From the IMG/VR virus record IMGVR_UViG_3300042544_001590, positions 1 to 64,000 of that record: a DNA stretch of 64,000 nucleotides; one strand, given 5' to 3'. Position numbers and translations under genes: made by a program. The notes beneath the pieces are model-generated. The model did no database searches and was not told where the DNA came from. It saw nothing but the letters and a program-made list of their open reading frames with translations. Positions 20,255 through 59,814 of the stretch are shown here, piece by piece; position 1 is the first letter of the stretch; each line of letters begins with the position of its first letter.

Positions 20255-20634
20255 TTTAAAAAATAGACTATAATAAGATCATGAATGGATACTTGGGAGA
20301 ATTTGAAGTGGATATGGAAGACACGCCATACAAGGATTATGATAAATCCGATTGGATGGTGGAATATATCCAAATGTATGGAGGTATTGATGGTAGCCAT
20401 CACAAGGATTGGGTGATGGATCAATGCATCCGTATTTGGAGTGGTTCAGAAGTGATTGTTAAGGAAGCTCGCTGGAAAGATGGAGAGCGAGAGTATTCGG
20501 AATTTAGAATCAATGTCGGAGAACCCACCAAAAAATATGAAAAATTGGTGGAGGATACCGAAGAAGAAGGATATGAATGGAATCAAGGAATAGCACCTTA
20601 AAAACTAGAATACGATTATGCCAACAGGATAAAA

Positions 20635-21969
20635 TTATCCAAAATCTGAGTAACCACTAACAAGTGATTTCTCAGATTTCAGACTAAAACAACTCCATCG
20701 ACTAAAATCATAGTCCTTGAAGAGAAACCTTAATTCGTTCAGTTTCTTATTATCTCTCAGATATTCATGAATGCCTTTGTAACCAATATTCTTAGGGTTA
20801 TAGTCCGATAGAATTGAATTCCATCTCTCTTTTATCAGACCCCTATTAATCTTTGGATATAAGACATCCACATCTGAAAATTCTTTACGCTTTTTGATAT
20901 AGCGATTTAAAAACACATGGCAACGGCGAGCAATTTCTAATGCTGCCGCAATGCTGTCGGTTTCCTCTGGATGATCAAGACATCCAACGGTGGAAGAATA
21001 CGCACATATAATCTCTTGGTTTTTGATACCAAGAATGTTAAGACGCTTAATGAGGTTTTGTGAAAATTTTAAACGATTCCAAGAGTTATTAAGGAGTCTA
21101 TTTAGCTTACGTCCTTTATTGTGGTCTTTAGAAGACATTGTAAGCTTCTCAAGACCCACACATTCCACTTTATAATATTTACAGAGATTTGATATGGATT
21201 TGGCAATTTCTACAACCTCGTGATCCTTTTTATTCTTACTATACGTCTCATTCAGCTTGGTAAGATCATAAACACTCTTATGGATGATAGTATCATCATT
21301 GAAATCCCTGATTGTAAATGCGATGTAATTGGGATTTAAATCCAATCCTGTGATTCTATTTTCAATAAATTGGTGTTCTTGTTCCATTAAGACAGATTCA
21401 TCAAAAGTAATATAAATATAATTATTATCTAATTTATAAGTGATCGGGGTGGAATTAAATTCAAAATACGATTGTAACTTTTCAAGCATCTTCCATCTGG
21501 AATTTGAAGTATTTAATTTCAAATTATAATGATCATTTTTAGTGCGTTTGAATATAATTTGTTTATTTATAATATCTAATTTTAATTTTCTATTACCGAG
21601 GGGTTCGTTCCGACCACCATTAAAAAAAGCTGGTCGGCTGTTTTTAATATTATTAAATTCTTCTTTAGTAATTATGCCTTTATTAAAACGTTTCCACTGA
21701 TTAAGTGATCCAAATGTTGTTTTGGTTTGTTTACACTCTTTAGCGGATTTAAAGAGAGCGGAAGCATCTCCAATTTGTGCTGCAAGGATGCTGGCATCAA
21801 CCAAATCATAATTAACATTGTAAGAACTCTTGATTTTTCTGGTGGCGTGGGTGATATCGTGTTTTTCCTTTTTGAAAATATTGAAAGCAATTCTTTTGAT
21901 CTTGTTGCATTCCTTGAGGAATGGTGCAAGATCGGAATCACATTCATATTTGACTTTGAGAGTAGTCAC
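20635..21969 (-). CDS. tnpB: TnpB/Cas12f-like RNA-guided RuvC nuclease, no TnpA
   Basis: RuvC I GLDLNPNYIA, II VGLEKL, III ETDSIAAALEIARR; AYSS motif; no zinc finger; probable GTG start 5 nt after TAAATA. Confidence 0.75.
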   Translation of the reverse strand: MTTLKVKYECDSDLAPFLKECNKIKRIAFNIFKKEKHDITHATRKIKSSYNVNYDLVDASILAAQIGDASALFKSAKECKQTKTTFGSLNQWKRFNKGIITKEEFNNIKNSRPAFFNGGRNEPLGNRKLKLDIINKQIIFKRTKNDHYNLKLNTSNSRWKMLEKLQSYFEFNSTPITYKLDNNYIYITFDESVLMEQEHQFIENRITGLDLNPNYIAFTIRDFNDDTIIHKSVYDLTKLNETYSKNKKDHEVVEIAKSISNLCKYYKVECVGLEKLTMSSKDHNKGRKLNRLLNNSWNRLKFSQNLIKRLNILGIKNQEIICAYSSTVGCLDHPEETDSIAAALEIARRCHVFLNRYIKKRKEFSDVDVLYPKINRGLIKERWNSILSDYNPKNIGYKGIHEYLRDNKKLNELRFLFKDYDFSRWSCFSLKSEKSLVSGYSDFG

Positions 21970-22010
21970 ATAAGTATTTAGTATATAACACGTTATTTTT
22001 TGAAATAGTG

Positions 22011-22038
22011 TTGACATCTTTAAAAACTAGATTACAAT
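22011..22038 (+). promoter_or_regulatory. Module copy with canonical -35: TTGACA-N16-TACAAT
   Basis: Same arrangement at 46175 (TTGACT-N16-TACACT). Confidence 0.75.
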
Positions 22039-22059
22039 GATAGCATAATAAATAAAAAA

Positions 22060-22689
22060 ATGACAGGATATACAGCAGCAGTTCAGGACGGAACAATCAC
22101 GGAATTCAGGGATTACGCACTTCAATGCGCCAGAGCTTTCGGGGCTTGTGTGATGCAACGGGATGACGACCCATCAGAACCTCCAAAAGAACAGGAAGAA
22201 TCGTCATATTATCAGGAAAGGGTTGATGAGACTCTGAAAGAAATCGAAGAACTGAAAAATCTTTCCGATGAAGAATTGGTGGAATCTGAAAAGAACACAA
22301 ATCTGAGAGAAATCGAGAAATGTAAACAACGTATTGAAGATAAAAAAATCGAAAGACTTCGATATGAAGATATGTTGGAGAAGGTGGAAGCTTGGAAATC
22401 CCCGTCTTTCGAACACAATAATTACAAGGAATTCATGATCAATCAATTGAAAGATTCCATTGCATTTGATTGTGGTGGTAGTTATTACGAAGACAATCTC
22501 CTGCAAGCTATTTCCAAATTGGAAAATATGCCAACAGCCAAAGAAATTAGGGAAGAGCGTTTTTCATCCTTGCAAAAGGATTTGAAATATTATCAGAAAA
22601 ATCTAGCAGAAGAGAAGGAACGAGTATCCGGTAGAAACCAATGGATTAGACAGCTTTATGAATCACTTGAAAATGGAAGCAAATCCTAA
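22060..22689 (+). CDS. Conserved phage hypothetical protein
   Basis: TGYTA...CARAFGA..M.RDD N-terminal family pattern, recognised from memory. Confidence 0.7.
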   Translation: MTGYTAAVQDGTITEFRDYALQCARAFGACVMQRDDDPSEPPKEQEESSYYQERVDETLKEIEELKNLSDEELVESEKNTNLREIEKCKQRIEDKKIERLRYEDMLEKVEAWKSPSFEHNNYKEFMINQLKDSIAFDCGGSYYEDNLLQAISKLENMPTAKEIREERFSSLQKDLKYYQKNLAEEKERVSGRNQWIRQLYESLENGSKS

Positions 22690-38300: not shown

Positions 38301-38762
38301 ATGCACCCCCAATTCAATCCCCAAGCCCTGCTTAACAAACCTCTGGAAATCTCCTATTGGAAAGATTCCATTGGGGAGGACGCAAAAATCGTTGACATTG
38401 GGGAAGACCAATATAAGATCGTATTTGAGCAAGCACCGGAAGACGATGATCAGGAAGACCTTTTCATTTGGACAACCCAAGAACCGGAATCAATCGAAGG
38501 AGATAGAGCATTCTTCCGAAACATTGGAGCAACAAATTTCTATCTGAAAATCAAACAAAAACTAGAATACAATAACATTATGAAAACAACAGTAAAGGAA
38601 CTGAGTGAGAAGCTGGGAGTAGATACCGTGTATGTGAACGGATTTCTTCAAACCCTAATCAAGATGGGCAAGGCAAGCGTGGTAGGCAAGGTTGAAAAAC
38701 CTAGCGGAACCCGTGGCAAGCCTTCCAATATCTACGAAATCAACGAGGGTATCGTTGACTAA
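38301..38762 (+). CDS. In-frame fusion of two module genes; second part (ATG 38580) is a small HTH-like protein
   Basis: Module at 38556 begins CAAAAACTAG instead of TAAAAACTAG and is read as QKLEYNNI-M. Confidence 0.6.
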   Translation: MHPQFNPQALLNKPLEISYWKDSIGEDAKIVDIGEDQYKIVFEQAPEDDDQEDLFIWTTQEPESIEGDRAFFRNIGATNFYLKIKQKLEYNNIMKTTVKELSEKLGVDTVYVNGFLQTLIKMGKASVVGKVEKPSGTRGKPSNIYEINEGIVD

Positions 38763-57694: not shown

Positions 57695-57769
57695 GGTGCG
57701 GTAGTCCAGCGGCAGGAGACAAATGACTTAAAATCATTACAGGGTCGGTTCGAATCCGACTCGCCACTC
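57695..57769 (+). tRNA. tRNA-Leu(UAA), short variable loop, defective acceptor (possible pseudo-tRNA)
   Basis: AATGA-CTTAAAA-TCATT, GTCGG-TTCGAAT-CCGAC; acceptor needs a bulge; no CCA. Confidence 0.65.
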
Positions 57770-57790
57770 TTTATAAAACTAAATGAAAAT

Positions 57791-57868
57791 TGTCCGGTAG
57801 CTCAAAGCGGTGAGAGCACTTGCCTTATAAGTGAGAGGTTGCGGGATCGACACCCGCCCGGACTACCA
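57791..57868 (+). tRNA. tRNA-Ile(UAU)
   Basis: Cloverleaf, loop CTTATAA, encoded CCA, T-loop ATCGACA, U1-U72 mismatch. Confidence 0.85.
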
Positions 57869-57900
57869 TTTTTTAAAAACTAAAATAAGATAACACCACG

Positions 57901-58557
57901 ATGACAACAATTGAATTTTGCAGCAAATACTCTCTTAGTGAAATGTGTGAGGAAGGACGGAATTTCGCTTTGAGTCTTGAAACAATGTCTCAAGTTTGGG
58001 AAAATTGTAGAAATCCGAGTTGGCTTTTCTGGATTCTCGACAAATGCAAGCCGCTGGATAAGGAACAATCCGTGAGATTGTCCATTGCATTTGCGGAAAC
58101 TTGTCTTATTAATGTTCCCGATGGAGAAACTCGCCCCAAACTTGCGATTGAAGCCTCAAAAGCATGGCTTGATAATCCATGCGAAGAAACAGAGTTAGCA
58201 GCAACATCAGCAGCAGAGTCAGCATCAGTAGCAGCATCAGCAGCATGGTCAGCACGGTCAGCAGCAGAGTCAGCAGCACGGTCAGCAGCATGGTCAGCAT
58301 GGTCAGCACGGTCAGCAGCACGGTCAGCAGCAGAGTCAGCAGCATGGTCAGCAGCAGAGTCAGCAGCATGGTCAGCAGAGTCAGCAGCAGAGTCAGCAGC
58401 ACGGTCAGCAGCACGGTCAGCAGCATGGTCAGCACGGTCAGCACGGTCAGCAGCAGAGTCAGCAGCATGGTCAGCAGCAGAGTCAGCAGCACGGTCAGCA
58501 GCACGGTCATCGCAATGCAATACGATACGGGAAATGATTTCAAACCCCTTCGGTTAA
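57901..58557 (+). CDS. Protein with low-complexity SA(A)W/R/E repeat tract
   Basis: GTCAGCA(GCA) 9/12-bp units ~58195-58510; N-terminal RP..AIEA..AWL domain. Confidence 0.75.
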   Translation: MTTIEFCSKYSLSEMCEEGRNFALSLETMSQVWENCRNPSWLFWILDKCKPLDKEQSVRLSIAFAETCLINVPDGETRPKLAIEASKAWLDNPCEETELAATSAAESASVAASAAWSARSAAESAARSAAWSAWSARSAARSAAESAAWSAAESAAWSAESAAESAARSAARSAAWSARSARSAAESAAWSAAESAARSAARSSQCNTIREMISNPFG

Positions 58558-58992
58558 AAACTAGAATAAGATAACACCATGACATTAAACGAGATCAAAA
58601 CAGCGGTTCGGGACGGTAAAAAAGTGTGCTGGGCAACCCCGATCTACGAAGTGATCAATCCGATCAAATCACCAACTTTGGATGCCAACGAAGAGCAATG
58701 GCTGATTCGGTGCAAGGCAAACGGTTCTTGCATTGGTTTGACACACCAAGACAATATCACGATGAACGGCGAGGAGAGCGAATTCTTCATCGCATAAAAA
58801 CTAGCCTATAATCACACCATGCAAGAAACAATGTCAATGAGAGTCCGGTCTGATAGGTGGGAATGGATTATGAAATGGTGTGAGGAAAACGGAAAGGATT
58901 GGAGGATTGAGGGAGATTGCCAAGAAGCAAGGATGGCATGGATCAAGTTCATCCAAGAAACCAAACCATAAAAACTAGCCTATAATCATCCC

Positions 58993-59061
58993 ATGCCTGA
59001 CAATATGTGCGAATACGATATCCAAGACATGATTGACTATCACAACGGGATTGTTAAGTAG
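58993..59061 (+). CDS. 22-aa peptide MPDNMCEYDIQDMIDYHNGIVK
   Basis: ATG at module +1; paralog of 57620. Confidence 0.55.
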   Translation: MPDNMCEYDIQDMIDYHNGIVK

Positions 59062-59070
59062 AATTTAAAT

Positions 59071-59147
59071 GGTTGCGTAGCCCAACCGCTAGAGGCCACA
59101 GACTTAAAATCTGTTCAGTATGGGTTGGAATCCCATCGCAACTACCA
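59071..59147 (+). tRNA. tRNA-Leu(UAA), short variable loop, C19-G56 swap
   Basis: GGTTGCG/CGCAACT-A-CCA; ACAGA-CTTAAAA-TCTGT; T-loop TTGGAAT. Confidence 0.85.
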
Positions 59148-59173
59148 TTTTTTAAAAACTAAAACACAATAAC

Positions 59174-59464
59174 GCTGAAGTGCTGGCACCCGCTGTCGAA
59201 AAAACTACAACGAAGCCCCAAATGTCTGATACCGAAAAACTTGCGGAAGCCACTGATAGCGGGTTGCTCCAGCCACGCCTTGTTCGGCTTCTTCCGTGTC
59301 CGTTCTGCGGTTCCGAAGCTCGCATTGGACAAGGCGACGGATGGCCGGGGGAAACCGTGGTCGAGTGCAGCAATGACGAAAACTGCCGCGCTCAAATGTC
59401 CTGCATCTGGGGCGAGAAGAATGAAACCGAACTCTGGAACGCCCGCGCAAATCCTCAGCCGAAC
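59174..59464 (-). mobile_element. Single integron-type cassette (attC 59171-59288) inserted in a module spacer
   Basis: AAC-GCTGAAGT-GCTGG-CACCCGCTGTC ... GATAGCGGGTTG-CT-CCAGC-CACGCCTT-GTTCGGC; far end GCCGAAC; excision restores CACAAT-AACAAC-ATG. Confidence 0.8.
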
Positions 59465-59626
59465 AACATGAAACAACTTGCAACTCTCGCCTTCTATGCG
59501 AAATACGCCGGATGGCAATCCTATCACAAGTCCATGCTTCCCCAAGTCAAAGCCCTAACACGCAAGGGATTTCTGGAAATGAATGAGCATGGGCAAGCGC
59601 GGTTCACGGGAAAGTGTCAAGATTAA
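59222..59626 (+). CDS. Lar-family restriction-alleviation-like protein fused in frame to the resident gene (ATG 59468)
   Basis: LLPCPFCGSEA...VEC....C...WNAR. Confidence 0.65.
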   Translation: MSDTEKLAEATDSGLLQPRLVRLLPCPFCGSEARIGQGDGWPGETVVECSNDENCRAQMSCIWGEKNETELWNARANPQPNNMKQLATLAFYAKYAGWQSYHKSMLPQVKALTRKGFLEMNEHGQARFTGKCQD

Positions 59627-59642
59627 AAAACTAGCCTAGAAT

Positions 59643-59717
59643 GCGCTTGTAGCTCAGTGGTTAGAGCGAGCCTCTCATAAAGGCTGGGTCGATGGTTCAA
59701 TCCCATCCGAGCGCACC
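59643..59717 (+). tRNA. tRNA with CAU anticodon (elongator Met or Ile2)
   Basis: GCGCTTG/CGAGCGC, AGCCT-CTCATAA-AGGCT, ends ACC. Confidence 0.88.
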
Positions 59718-59737
59718 TTTAAAAACTAGCATAGAAT

Positions 59738-59814
59738 GGATGCGTAGCTCAACTGGATAGAGCAATTCCCTTCTAAGGAATAGGTTGTGGGTTCAAATCC
59801 CGCCGCGTCCACCA
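59738..59814 (+). tRNA. tRNA-Arg(UCU)
   Basis: GGATGCG/CGCGTCC-A-CCA, ATTCC-CTTCTAA-GGAAT. Confidence 0.92.

What the first reader, a model, noticed from the sequence alone, without database searches (positions are those of the whole stretch)
20599..22070. TnpB-only element that splits a gene start and rebuilds it with its own promoter and ATG
Seen: left of the element is ATG CCA ACA GGA TA (MPTG.., 20618) going nowhere. Right of it is ATG ACA GGA TAT ACA GCA (MTGYTA.., 22060), so ACAGGATA is duplicated. The insert carries a full TTGACA-plus-module promoter facing out, no tnpA, intact RuvC D-E-D residues and a late-type TAAATA promoter like the homing endonucleases. From memory this gene family starts MPTGYT. 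Established: TnpB guides derive from the flank beyond the gene 3' end. Inference: RNA-guided homing into the empty allele with neutralised insertion cost. The predicted guide (TATCCTGTTGGCATAATCGT...) runs toward the module itself, and the stranded left module would transcribe antisense to tnpB.
Basis: partly seen in the sequence, partly recalled or inferred. Interest (0 to 1): 0.75.

Follow-up and report, generated by a model that had tools for sequence, protein, structure and literature searches.

The report
Phage TnpB element that rebuilds gene start
A 1.4-kb selfish element in a lake phage encodes only a Cas12-like, probably RNA-guided nuclease (TnpB); it sits inside the start of a phage gene and carries its own outward promoter and start codon that keep the gene working, which would be a new way for such elements to spread among viruses without harm.

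Summary

- **Empty allele:** Two related phage contigs (L003, L004) carry exactly the predicted sequence ATGCCAACAGGATATACAGCA. The window has a clean 1439-bp insertion (20632-22070) flanked by the 8-bp repeat ACAGGATA.
- **Protein:** The 444-aa protein has a Cas12f/TnpB fold with an invariant D-E-D triad but no zinc finger. It fails the curated TnpB HMM cut-offs.
- **No transposase:** The complete 207-kb genome has no tnpA.
- **Guide RNA:** The last ~250 nt of tnpB carry a conserved, co-varying RNA structure that ends in a hairpin, like an omega-RNA. The right end closes with a family-wide motif, TAAYTN.
- **Target geometry:** At five independent insertion sites this guide matches element-free genomes, each time directly after GT[A/C], a TAM-like motif.
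- **Rebuilt start:** The left-end side carries a 57-bp cassette (TTGACA-16-TACAAT plus the phage's promoter module, an A-rich leader and ATG). Its first 33 nt recur identically next to a relative's element (L114) at a different site, so it is portable.
- **Relatives:** Other family members rebuild up to 16 N-terminal codons, a -35 box or a split gene.

Cleavage, the RNA and homing itself are inferred, not shown. I rate it a new variant of a known kind.

The parts
20598..20616 (+). Stranded native promoter module of the target gene (TTAAAAACTAGAATAC plus GAT). The gap to the ATG is only 4 nt, against 9 nt in the empty allele.
   Evidence: The module occurs 89 times on the + strand of the genome, and 55 copies lie exactly 9 nt before an ATG.
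20618..20634 (+). Stranded 5' end of the target gene: ATG CCA ACA GGA TA, closed by a TAA formed at the junction with the element.
   Evidence: It is homologous to the uninterrupted start in L003/L004.
20612..20631 (-). Predicted omega-RNA guide, which is also the retained protospacer copy: TATCCTGTTGGCATAATCGT, the first 20 nt beyond the right end.
   Evidence: The right-end boundary is set by the family-wide TAAYTN motif. The guide matches empty allele L003 at 17/20, directly 3' of GTA.
20624..20631 (+). Left copy of the 8-bp direct repeat ACAGGATA (protospacer positions 1-8).
20632..20637 (-). Right-end terminal motif TAATTT (family consensus TAAYTN). Its TAA is the tnpB stop codon.
   Evidence: Seen across elements at different sites (15 loci listed).
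20642..20679 (-). Terminal hairpin of the omega-RNA-like scaffold, just before the guide.
   Evidence: inverted repeat I4.: -25.7 kcal/mol against -9.2 for shuffles. A hairpin at this position in all 12 relatives folded (clearly stronger than shuffles in 9 of them), each with a different sequence.
20632..20880 (-). Candidate omega-RNA scaffold overlapping the 3' end of tnpB.
   Evidence: Synonymous codon identity rises from about 0.55 to 0.8-0.87 in the last ~85 codons. The consensus structure has 96% of cells paired and 13 compensatory pairs, against 38-49% and 1-5 in shifted controls.
20635..21969 (-). tnpB-like gene, 444 aa, GTG start. RuvC residues D210, E274 and D338. No zinc finger.
21975..21981 (-). 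CTAAATA late-type promoter-like motif, 5 nt before the tnpB start.
   Evidence: Conserved upstream of tnpB in L012-L016, L019 and other relatives. TAAATA-N4-7-ATG is about twice as frequent genome-wide as in shuffles. Function untested.
21995..22005 (+). Outer edge of the conserved left-end core (ATTTTTTGAAA). Similarity among close relatives at different sites stops here.
22006..22062 (+). Outward-facing expression cassette carried by the insert: TTGACA (22011) - 16 nt - TACAAT (22033), module copy 22020-22035, A-rich leader and a new ATG (22060).
   Evidence: Absent from the empty allele. Best sigma-70-like site in the region. Its first 33 nt (22007-22038 region) are identical next to L114's element at a different site.
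22063..22070 (+). Right copy of the 8-bp repeat ACAGGATA. It is now codons 2-4 of the rebuilt gene and is followed by TAC, the reverse complement of the GTA TAM-like motif.
22060..22689 (+). Rebuilt target gene (phrog_8905, function unknown), 209 aa, MTGYT..., lacking Pro2.
   Evidence: dN/dS is 0.31 against L003.

Best explanation
Window 20632-22070 is a tnpA-less TnpB/omega-RNA element that behaves like a free-standing homing endonuclease gene in a T4-like lake phage.

Proposed mechanism:
1. tnpB is transcribed from its own CTAAATA-type promoter.
2. The 3' ~250 nt of that transcript fold into an omega-RNA scaffold. The guide is the 20 nt of flank just past the right end. This flank is the native -10 region, start codon and first four codons of the target gene.
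3. In a co-infecting phage that lacks the element, this sequence lies next to a GTA motif and is cut.
4. Recombinational repair from the occupied genome copies the element in.
5. The occupied allele is immune, because only 8 nt of the protospacer remain next to GTA.
6. The target gene loses its promoter and start codon. An outward-facing cassette on the left-end side replaces them: a sigma-70-like promoter, the phage's own promoter module, a leader and an ATG fused in frame. The gene is therefore still expressed, minus Pro2.

Shown by sequence: the insertion, the empty allele, the protein fold and catalytic triad, the conserved RNA structure, the guide/TAM geometry, and the portability of the cassette.
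Inferred: RNA production, cleavage, homing and promoter activity.
For: - Empty alleles with the exact predicted junction, in 87-96% identical flanks.
- AlphaFold model with pLDDT 86.8. All top PDB hits are Cas12f, Cas12k, TnpB (8iaz, 8h1j, 8exa) or Fanzor2.
- D210, E274 and D338 are invariant in 34 homologs.
- 26 of 34 relatives hit TIGR01766 and 5 hit NF040570 guided_TnpB.
- tblastn hits the annotated ISCaje4 TnpB of Campylobacter phage CP220.
- No TnpA of either kind in the complete genome.
- Synonymous-site conservation, covariation and a co-varying terminal hairpin in the last ~250 nt.
- Right-end motif TAAYTN across the family. Guides match naive genomes 15-19/20 directly after GT[A/C] at 5 of 5 sites tested.
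- The cassette lies inside the insert, is the best promoter-like site in the region, and is shared with L114 at another site.
- L016 and L114 carry 15-16 recoded N-terminal codons of their targets. L012 restores a -35 box. L116 brings TTGACA-16-TAAGTT.
- The target gene is intact, with dN/dS 0.31.
Against: - The window protein does not reach any curated TnpB HMM cut-off.
- It lacks the zinc-ribbon found in characterised TnpBs, so nuclease activity is not guaranteed.
- No RNA data could be examined, and Rfam has no match.
- Four lake metagenomes holding this phage show only the occupied allele and no empty joint. There is thus no sign of ongoing polymorphism within the species.
- The TAM-like motif is only 2-3 nt, which is unusually short.
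- The rebuilt protein lacks a Pro2 found in every homolog examined, so the cost may not be fully neutralised.
- The origin of the 8-bp repeat and of the recoded 5' segments is unexplained.
Confidence: 0.72

Rival explanations
1. Passive gene cassette. The tnpB gene was shuffled in by recombination between the many copies of the phage promoter module, in the way promoter-flanked cassettes move in T4-type phages. TnpB plays no part in its spread, and the flanking repeat and second module are by-products.
For: Module copies flank the insert (20598 and 22020). The module is present 89 times in the genome. Only the occupied allele was seen in the population sampled.
Against: The junctions are not in the modules. 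The right end abuts a protospacer that, in naive genomes, follows GT[A/C] at 5 of 5 sites, including sites in phages and regions without modules. The ORF, the catalytic triad and the RNA structure are all under purifying selection.
Confidence: 0.1
2. Inter-phage weapon or exclusion factor rather than a drive. TnpB cuts the start of a conserved gene in competing phages mainly to kill or exclude them. Copying of the element is incidental.
For: The guide covers the promoter and start of a widely conserved gene. Intron endonucleases are known to act this way in jumbo phages (PMC11620839, seen).
Against: The same geometry gives homing whenever the flanks are homologous, and here they are 87-96% identical to the empty-allele phages. 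Family members sit at many different sites, as expected of a spreading element.
Confidence: 0.1
3. An ordinary IS200/IS605- or IS607-type insertion sequence, mobilised in trans by a TnpA from the bacterial host. GT[A/C] would be the TnpA target and TnpB only an accessory.
For: Insertion exactly 3' of a short conserved motif is the IS200/IS605 rule (established knowledge; Karvelis 2021, PMC8612924).
Against: There is no tnpA in the phage. The inserted DNA includes site-specific rebuilt gene ends and an 8-bp repeat, which peel-and-paste transposition does not make. All close relatives found are on phage-like contigs. Subterminal TnpA-binding hairpins were not looked for.
Confidence: 0.06

Closest known systems
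TnpB/omega-RNA of IS200/IS605 and IS607 elements (ISDra2, ISFba1)
   Same: - RuvC fold with a D-E-D triad.
- Structured RNA overlapping the 3' end of tnpB.
- Guide taken from the flank beyond the right end.
- In the empty site, the target is preceded by a short conserved motif.
- The occupied site is immune because the element separates the motif from the target.
   Different: - No TnpA anywhere in the genome.
- No zinc ribbon.
- Below the curated HMM cut-offs.
- Resident in a lytic-type T4-like phage.
- TAM-like motif of only about 3 nt.
- The inserted DNA also carries a promoter/leader/ATG, or recoded N-terminal codons, that restore the interrupted gene.
Free-standing homing endonuclease genes of T4-like phages (Seg, Mob; intronless homing)
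   Same: - A nuclease gene with its own late-type promoter, lodged between or inside conserved phage genes.
- Presence/absence polymorphism among relatives.
- Predicted spread in co-infection by break repair.
- One relative (L032) splits the gp46/Rad50-like gene, as HEGs split genes.
   Different: Target recognition is predicted to be by RNA guide rather than by protein. Self versus non-self is set by the insertion itself rather than by substitutions in the target.
IStrons (group I intron plus TnpB; PMC10690162)
   Same: A TnpB element that neutralises the cost of landing in a gene.
   Different: IStrons restore the gene by RNA splicing. This element restores it at the DNA level by supplying a new promoter and start.
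IS elements with outward promoters, and integrative elements that carry a replacement gene end (own knowledge, not tested here)
   Same: An outward-facing -35/-10 drives the neighbouring gene, and a duplicated gene end keeps the target functional.
   Different: Those elements use DDE transposases or integrases, and usually replace 3' ends (tRNA genes, icd). This one is a TnpB-only element that replaces a 5' end.

Membership tests
TnpB / Cas12 (RuvC-type RNA-guided nuclease) | Split RuvC fold with WED/REC-like N-terminal part | tested here: met
   AF2 model with pLDDT 86.8. Foldseek PDB: the top 41 hits are all Cas12f/k/g, TnpB or Fanzor2, with E from 1.7e-9 to 1e-3.
TnpB / Cas12 (RuvC-type RNA-guided nuclease) | Catalytic D-E-D triad conserved | tested here: met
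   D210 (LDLNPN), E274 (GLEKL) and D338 (ETDSIAAALEI) are invariant in 34 homologs. Placement in the active site of the model was not measured.
TnpB / Cas12 (RuvC-type RNA-guided nuclease) | Match to curated family HMMs (Pfam OrfB_IS605 / OrfB_Zn_ribbon, NCBIfam guided_TnpB) | tested here: not met
   No TnpB family in Pfam. TIGR01766 scores only 16.4 bits against a cut-off of 32. Relatives do match: 26/34 hit TIGR01766 and 5/34 hit NF040570, best E 1e-13.
TnpB / Cas12 (RuvC-type RNA-guided nuclease) | Zinc ribbon (CxxC...CxxC) between RuvC-II and RuvC-III | tested here: not met
   The 64 residues between E274 and D338 hold no cysteine pairs.
TnpB / Cas12 (RuvC-type RNA-guided nuclease) | Omega-RNA scaffold overlapping the 3' end of the gene, with the guide in the flank | tested here: met
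   In silico only: synonymous-site conservation, covariation, terminal hairpin, and guide-target matches in naive genomes. RNA not observed.
TnpB / Cas12 (RuvC-type RNA-guided nuclease) | Conserved TAM directly 5' of the target in the empty site | tested here: met
   GT[A/C] at 5 of 5 sites where a naive genome was available. The motif is short, and its function is untested.
TnpB / Cas12 (RuvC-type RNA-guided nuclease) | RNA-guided DNA cleavage | not testable with these tools
   Needs biochemistry or an interference assay.
IS200/IS605 or IS607 insertion sequence | Encodes, or is accompanied by, TnpA (Y1 HUH or serine recombinase) | tested here: not met
   PF01797 and PF00239 are absent from the complete genome, and the controls rang.
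IS200/IS605 or IS607 insertion sequence | Insertion without target duplication, and subterminal hairpins bound by TnpA | tested here: inconclusive
   An 8-bp repeat flanks the inserted DNA, but it can be read as part of the rebuilt gene end. TnpA-type end hairpins were not examined.
Homing endonuclease gene (functional class) | Same-locus presence/absence among related genomes, with the nuclease target spanning the insertion point of the empty allele | tested here: met
Homing endonuclease gene (functional class) | Super-Mendelian inheritance or co-conversion in mixed infection | not testable with these tools
   The host is unknown. Metagenome contigs showed only the occupied allele.

The most novel reading that the evidence does not exclude
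A whole clade of phage-borne, TnpA-less TnpB elements spreads as RNA-guided homing genes. It has evolved a general 'insert into the 5' end and bring your own 5' end' strategy. A portable outward promoter/leader/ATG cassette, together with site-specific recoded codons, restores the target. The recoding falls on protospacer positions 9-20, or on the TAM, which is what makes the occupied allele immune. The short remnant of the protospacer (0-19 nt, typically 7-8) left beside the TAM would then be the scar of the first capture of a new site at a TnpB-made break. That would amount to a route by which such elements retarget without any transposase.
Probability: 0.35. Interest if true: 0.88.

Novelty: new variant of a known kind. 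Interest (0 to 1): 0.78.

Why it matters
- **TnpA-free spread in viruses.** TnpB is the ancestor of Cas12. How TnpB-only elements, which are very common, persist and move without a transposase is an open question. TnpA-independent 'non-restorative' homing has been shown in a plasmid population and is called theoretical for phages (PMC13565253). This locus gives a natural occupied/empty pair, a defined guide, a candidate TAM and a family of independent insertions, so the idea can be tested directly in viruses.
- **A new way to neutralise insertion cost.** After introns, inteins and IStrons, this is a DNA-level fix: an element-borne promoter and start codon, or recoded N-terminal codons.
- **A minimal nuclease.** The protein is a compact (444 aa), zinc-finger-less RuvC nuclease with a very short TAM-like motif, which is of interest as a minimal programmable nuclease.

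Tried and rejected
- Megablast of 5 kb against GenBank phages: no match.
- Pfam and PHROGs on the nuclease: nothing useful.
- PDB sequence-profile searches with 5- and 34-sequence profiles: only noise. The link to TnpB needed the fold search.
- Rfam at a permissive threshold: no known RNA family.
- Metagenome scan with the protein alignment: no confirmed loci. A DNA-pattern scan gave 5.
- Right-end pattern scan of viral contigs: only loci already known.
- Read laying on four lake metagenomes with partial word share, looking for an empty allele of the same species: the partial share was just fragmentary low-coverage assembly. All junction-spanning contigs were occupied.
- Reading the 8-bp repeat as a DDE-type target duplication: rejected. 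There are no terminal inverted repeats, and the repeat length varies among sites (4-12 nt, 18 of 19 at L014; none at L114 and L116).
- TTGACA as a general feature of the module: rejected. Other module copies have no -35; only one other TTGACA+module promoter exists, at genome position 71820.
- G000 as the empty allele for L013, L019 and L029: only partly usable, because the neighbouring genes differ.
- P0007, whose long ORF suggested the same cassette: it has a different left end.
- A distant multicopy subfamily has discrete ends but was not pursued.
Full report
**What is in the sequence**

The window is the first 64 kb of a complete 207,489-bp virus record with direct terminal repeats. Lake-water metagenomes hold the same sequence. 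Contigs of its relatives carry T4-type genes: gp32, the gp44 clamp loader, a gp46/47-like pair, gp25, the T4 portal, gp13 and gp15.

- At 20618 the + strand reads ATG CCA ACA GGA TA and then runs into a TAA. At 22060 it reads ATG ACA GGA TAT ACA GCA and opens a 209-aa ORF.
- ACAGGATA is present at 20624-20631 and again at 22063-22070.
- Between the two copies lies a minus-strand ORF.
- Its neighbours are the genes phrog_23179 (upstream) and phrog_8905 (the target, function unknown).

**The empty allele exists**

I searched viral contigs with the target protein.

- One contig is identical to the window and is also occupied (L002).
- Two contigs with an 87% identical protein (L003, L004) read module - 9 nt - ATGCCAACAGGATATACAGCA without interruption.
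- More distant homologs (L005-L010) all start ATGCC(A/C/T), giving MP(T/S)GYT.
- With the insert removed, the window aligns to L003 at 87-96% identity for about 600 bp on each side.

The window therefore holds a clean 1439-bp insertion, 20632-22070. Equivalently, the boundaries can be shifted by up to 8 bp.

**The protein**

- Pfam and PHROGs gave nothing.
- tblastn found about 32% identical proteins in Lak megaphages, in an uncultured 462-kb phage, and in the annotated ISCaje4 TnpB of Campylobacter phage CP220.
- The large protein database holds 196 homologs. Many are on contigs of about 200 kb, and some are named IS605 OrfB by JGI.
- All close relatives start at a codon matching the window's GTG at 21969, 5-6 nt after CTAAATA. 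The protein is therefore 444 aa.
- D210, E274 and D338 are invariant in a 34-sequence alignment reaching down to 30% identity. There are no cysteine pairs between E274 and D338, so the usual zinc ribbon is missing.
- An AlphaFold model (pLDDT 86.8) matches only Cas12f, Cas12k, Cas12g, ISFba1 and ISDra2 TnpB, and Fanzor2 among its top 41 PDB hits.
- In NCBIfam, 26 of 34 relatives hit TIGR01766 and 5 hit guided_TnpB. The window protein itself stays below the cut-off.
- The genome has no Y1 transposase and no serine recombinase, and the positive controls rang.

**An omega-RNA-like element**

- Across 12 elements, synonymous codon identity is 0.47-0.68 (mostly about 0.55) through most of tnpB. It rises to 0.78-0.87 in the last ~85 codons, and 23-24-nt stretches there are nearly invariant at the DNA level.
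- RNAalifold predicts a long-range stem system over window 20880-20693 (-). It has 96% of cells paired and 13 pairs with compensatory changes. Shifting the partners by 1-3 columns gives 38-49% paired and 1-5 compensatory pairs.
- Just before the stop codon every family member has a hairpin, with different sequences in different sub-lineages; it is clearly stronger than shuffled sequence in 9 of the 12 folded. In the window it spans 20679-20642 and folds at -25.7 kcal/mol, against -9.2 for shuffles.
- Rfam has no matching family.
- No RNA data could be examined.

**Geometry of the right end**

Elements at different sites share a terminal motif, TAAYTN. In the window it is TAATTT, whose TAA is the stop codon. 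Similarity between elements ends there.

I took the next 20 nt as the guide and searched genomes that lack the element at that site. The matches were well above the next-best hit for the first, second, fourth and fifth rows. The third was only one match above, but it lies at the homologous gene.

| Element / naive genome | Match | Bases just 5' of the target |
|---|---|---|
| Window / L003 | 17/20 | GTA |
| L016 / own genome G000 | 18/20 | GTA |
| L114 / G000 | 15/20 | GTA |
| L116 / G000 | 19/20 | GTC |
| L029 / G000 | 18/20 | GTC |

Five of five targets sit directly 3' of GT[A/C]. This is the canonical TnpB arrangement: TAM, then the target, with the element's right end joined exactly at that boundary. 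It covers part of the -10-like box, the start codon and the first four codons of the target gene.

In the occupied allele, GTA is followed by only 8 matching nt and then by the new ATG and A-rich leader (11/20 matches overall). Self-cleavage is therefore not expected.

**The left-end side rebuilds the gene**

Similarity among close relatives at different sites stops at ATTTTTTGAAA (window 21995-22005).

The remaining 57 bp of the insert (22006-22062) contain TTGACA - 16 nt - TACAAT, which is the best sigma-70-like site in the region at 11/12. They also contain a copy of the phage's promoter module, a 21-nt A-rich leader and an ATG. None of this is in the empty allele.

The decisive comparison is L114. 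Its TnpB is 81% identical and sits in a different gene, the homolog of the window gene that starts at 38580. Next to its left-end core it has the identical 33 nt, agtgTTGACA...TACAAT, and a similar leader plus ATG. The promoter cassette is therefore a portable part of this sub-lineage and not a local accident.

Other family members show variants of the same theme:

- **L016** interrupts a helicase gene 47 nt after its ATG. It keeps the stranded 16 codons by the right end. On the left-end side it carries a recoded copy of those codons, again with exactly 8 identical nt at the junction. G000 131170 is the empty allele.
- **L114** carries about 15 recoded codons.
- **L012** sits inside the -35 box of a native promoter and regenerates it.
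- **L019** and **L116** bring TTGACA-16-TAAATT and TTGACA-16-TAAGTT.
- **L116** and **L032** supply the stop codon of the upstream ORF from the right-end TAA. L032 splits the gp46/Rad50-like gene and gives its second half a new ATG.
- **Orientation:** in 12 of 14 distinct sites the left end faces the 5' end of a divergently oriented gene (my tally).
- **Where the copies differ:** in the window and in L016, the left-end copy differs from the native sequence mainly at protospacer positions 9-20, and homology resumes beyond. In L014 the protospacer copy is almost intact (18/19), but the GT of the motif reads TT. Both patterns fit selection for self-immunity. This is an inference.

**What the promoter module is**

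- TTAAAAACTAGAATAC-like modules occur 49 times on the + strand of the window, where 0.1 are expected. They occur 89 times in the genome, all but two on the + strand and mostly within the first 72 kb.
- 55 copies lie exactly 9 nt before an ATG.
- Modules also lie 3 nt before a tRNA gene and between tRNAs. This favours a compact -10-type promoter that gives very short leaders over a translation signal. That is an inference.
- The stranded left copy has lost 5 nt of its spacer. Whether this matters is unknown.

**State of the rebuilt gene**

It is full length and 87% identical to the L003 protein, with dN/dS 0.31. It lacks Pro2, which every homolog examined has. The phage is abundant in several lake metagenomes, so the arrangement is viable.

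**Mechanism and rivals**

The best reading is TnpA-independent, RNA-guided homing between co-infecting phages, with the insertion cost offset by an element-borne 5' end.

- **Shown:** the insertion/empty pair, the fold, the triad, the RNA conservation, the guide/TAM geometry and cassette portability.
- **Inferred:** RNA, cleavage, homing and promoter activity.
- **Rivals:** passive cassette shuffling between modules, a pure anti-competitor weapon, or mobilisation by a host TnpA in trans. All three are less well supported (see that section).
- **Against ongoing mobility:** four metagenomes showed only the occupied allele.

**Unexplained**

The origin of the short junction repeat is open. Its length is 8, 8, 7, 7, 12 and 4 nt at six sites and none at two. 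So is the origin of the recoded segments. Two ideas fit:

- a longer original duplication whose guide-matching part was later scrambled; or
- capture of a new site by end-joining at a TnpB-made break, which leaves the TAM-proximal stump of the protospacer.

I could not discriminate between them.

**Novelty**

TnpB, the omega-RNA, the TAM and restorative homing are established (PMC8612924, PMC10055086). TnpA-independent spread has been shown in a plasmid population, and homing into phages is described as theoretical in a 2026 review (PMC13565253). Four literature searches found no description of phage TnpB elements that carry a replacement promoter, start codon or N-terminal codons. I therefore rate this as a new variant of a known kind.

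Noticed in passing
window 7576-62653 (+), e.g. 12055, 24717, 37671: A 16-nt module, TTAAAAACTAGAATAC, occurs 49 times in the window and 89 times in the genome, nearly all on the + strand within the first 72 kb. Most copies lie exactly 9 nt before an ATG and have no -35. It is probably a phage-specific compact promoter that gives near-leaderless mRNAs.
   Followed up: partly
window 57695-59814: A cluster of five tRNA genes (Leu, Ile, Leu, Met, Arg) is interleaved with module copies. One module ends 3 nt before tRNA-Arg. This argues that the module acts in transcription or processing and not in translation.
   Followed up: partly
window 38555-38625: This gene start (module, then ATGAAAACAACAGTAAAG...) is the empty allele of another TnpB insertion seen in relative L114. 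It contains that element's protospacer directly after GGTA.
   Followed up: yes
G000 134788-136906 (outside the window): The gp46/Rad50-like gene of this phage is split into 306-aa and 298-aa parts by a 108-aa ORF of unknown function. In relative L032 the same gene is split at a nearby point by a TnpB element.
   Followed up: partly
G000 71820 (outside the window): This is the only other place in the genome where a perfect TTGACA sits directly upstream of a module copy (TTGACATCCTTAAAAACTAGG...). It resembles the promoter carried by the element.
   Followed up: no
L003 about 617 nt downstream of the insertion point (corresponds to window ~22687): The empty-allele phage has about 1.1 kb of extra DNA just after the target gene that the window lacks. 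Further indels lie at about -710 and -1900. The neighbourhood is a mosaic hot spot.
   Followed up: no
L040-L113 (viral contigs of 100-550 kb): Distant relatives of this TnpB (28-39% identity) are common and often multicopy in huge phage genomes, including Lak-like ones. One subfamily (L076, L082, L092, L094, L102) has sharply defined ends, with the right end finishing AAAAACAATACA.
   Followed up: partly
L013 and L029, left-end side: In these relatives the gene next to the left end differs from the gene at the same place in the window's genome (for example, a ParB-like ORF in L013). The element may travel with neighbouring cargo, or sit at gene-replacement boundaries.
   Followed up: no
L016 83-793: A GIY-YIG/NUMOD3 homing-endonuclease-like gene lies about 2 kb from the TnpB element in this relative, so classical HEGs and TnpB elements coexist in these phages.
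   Followed up: no
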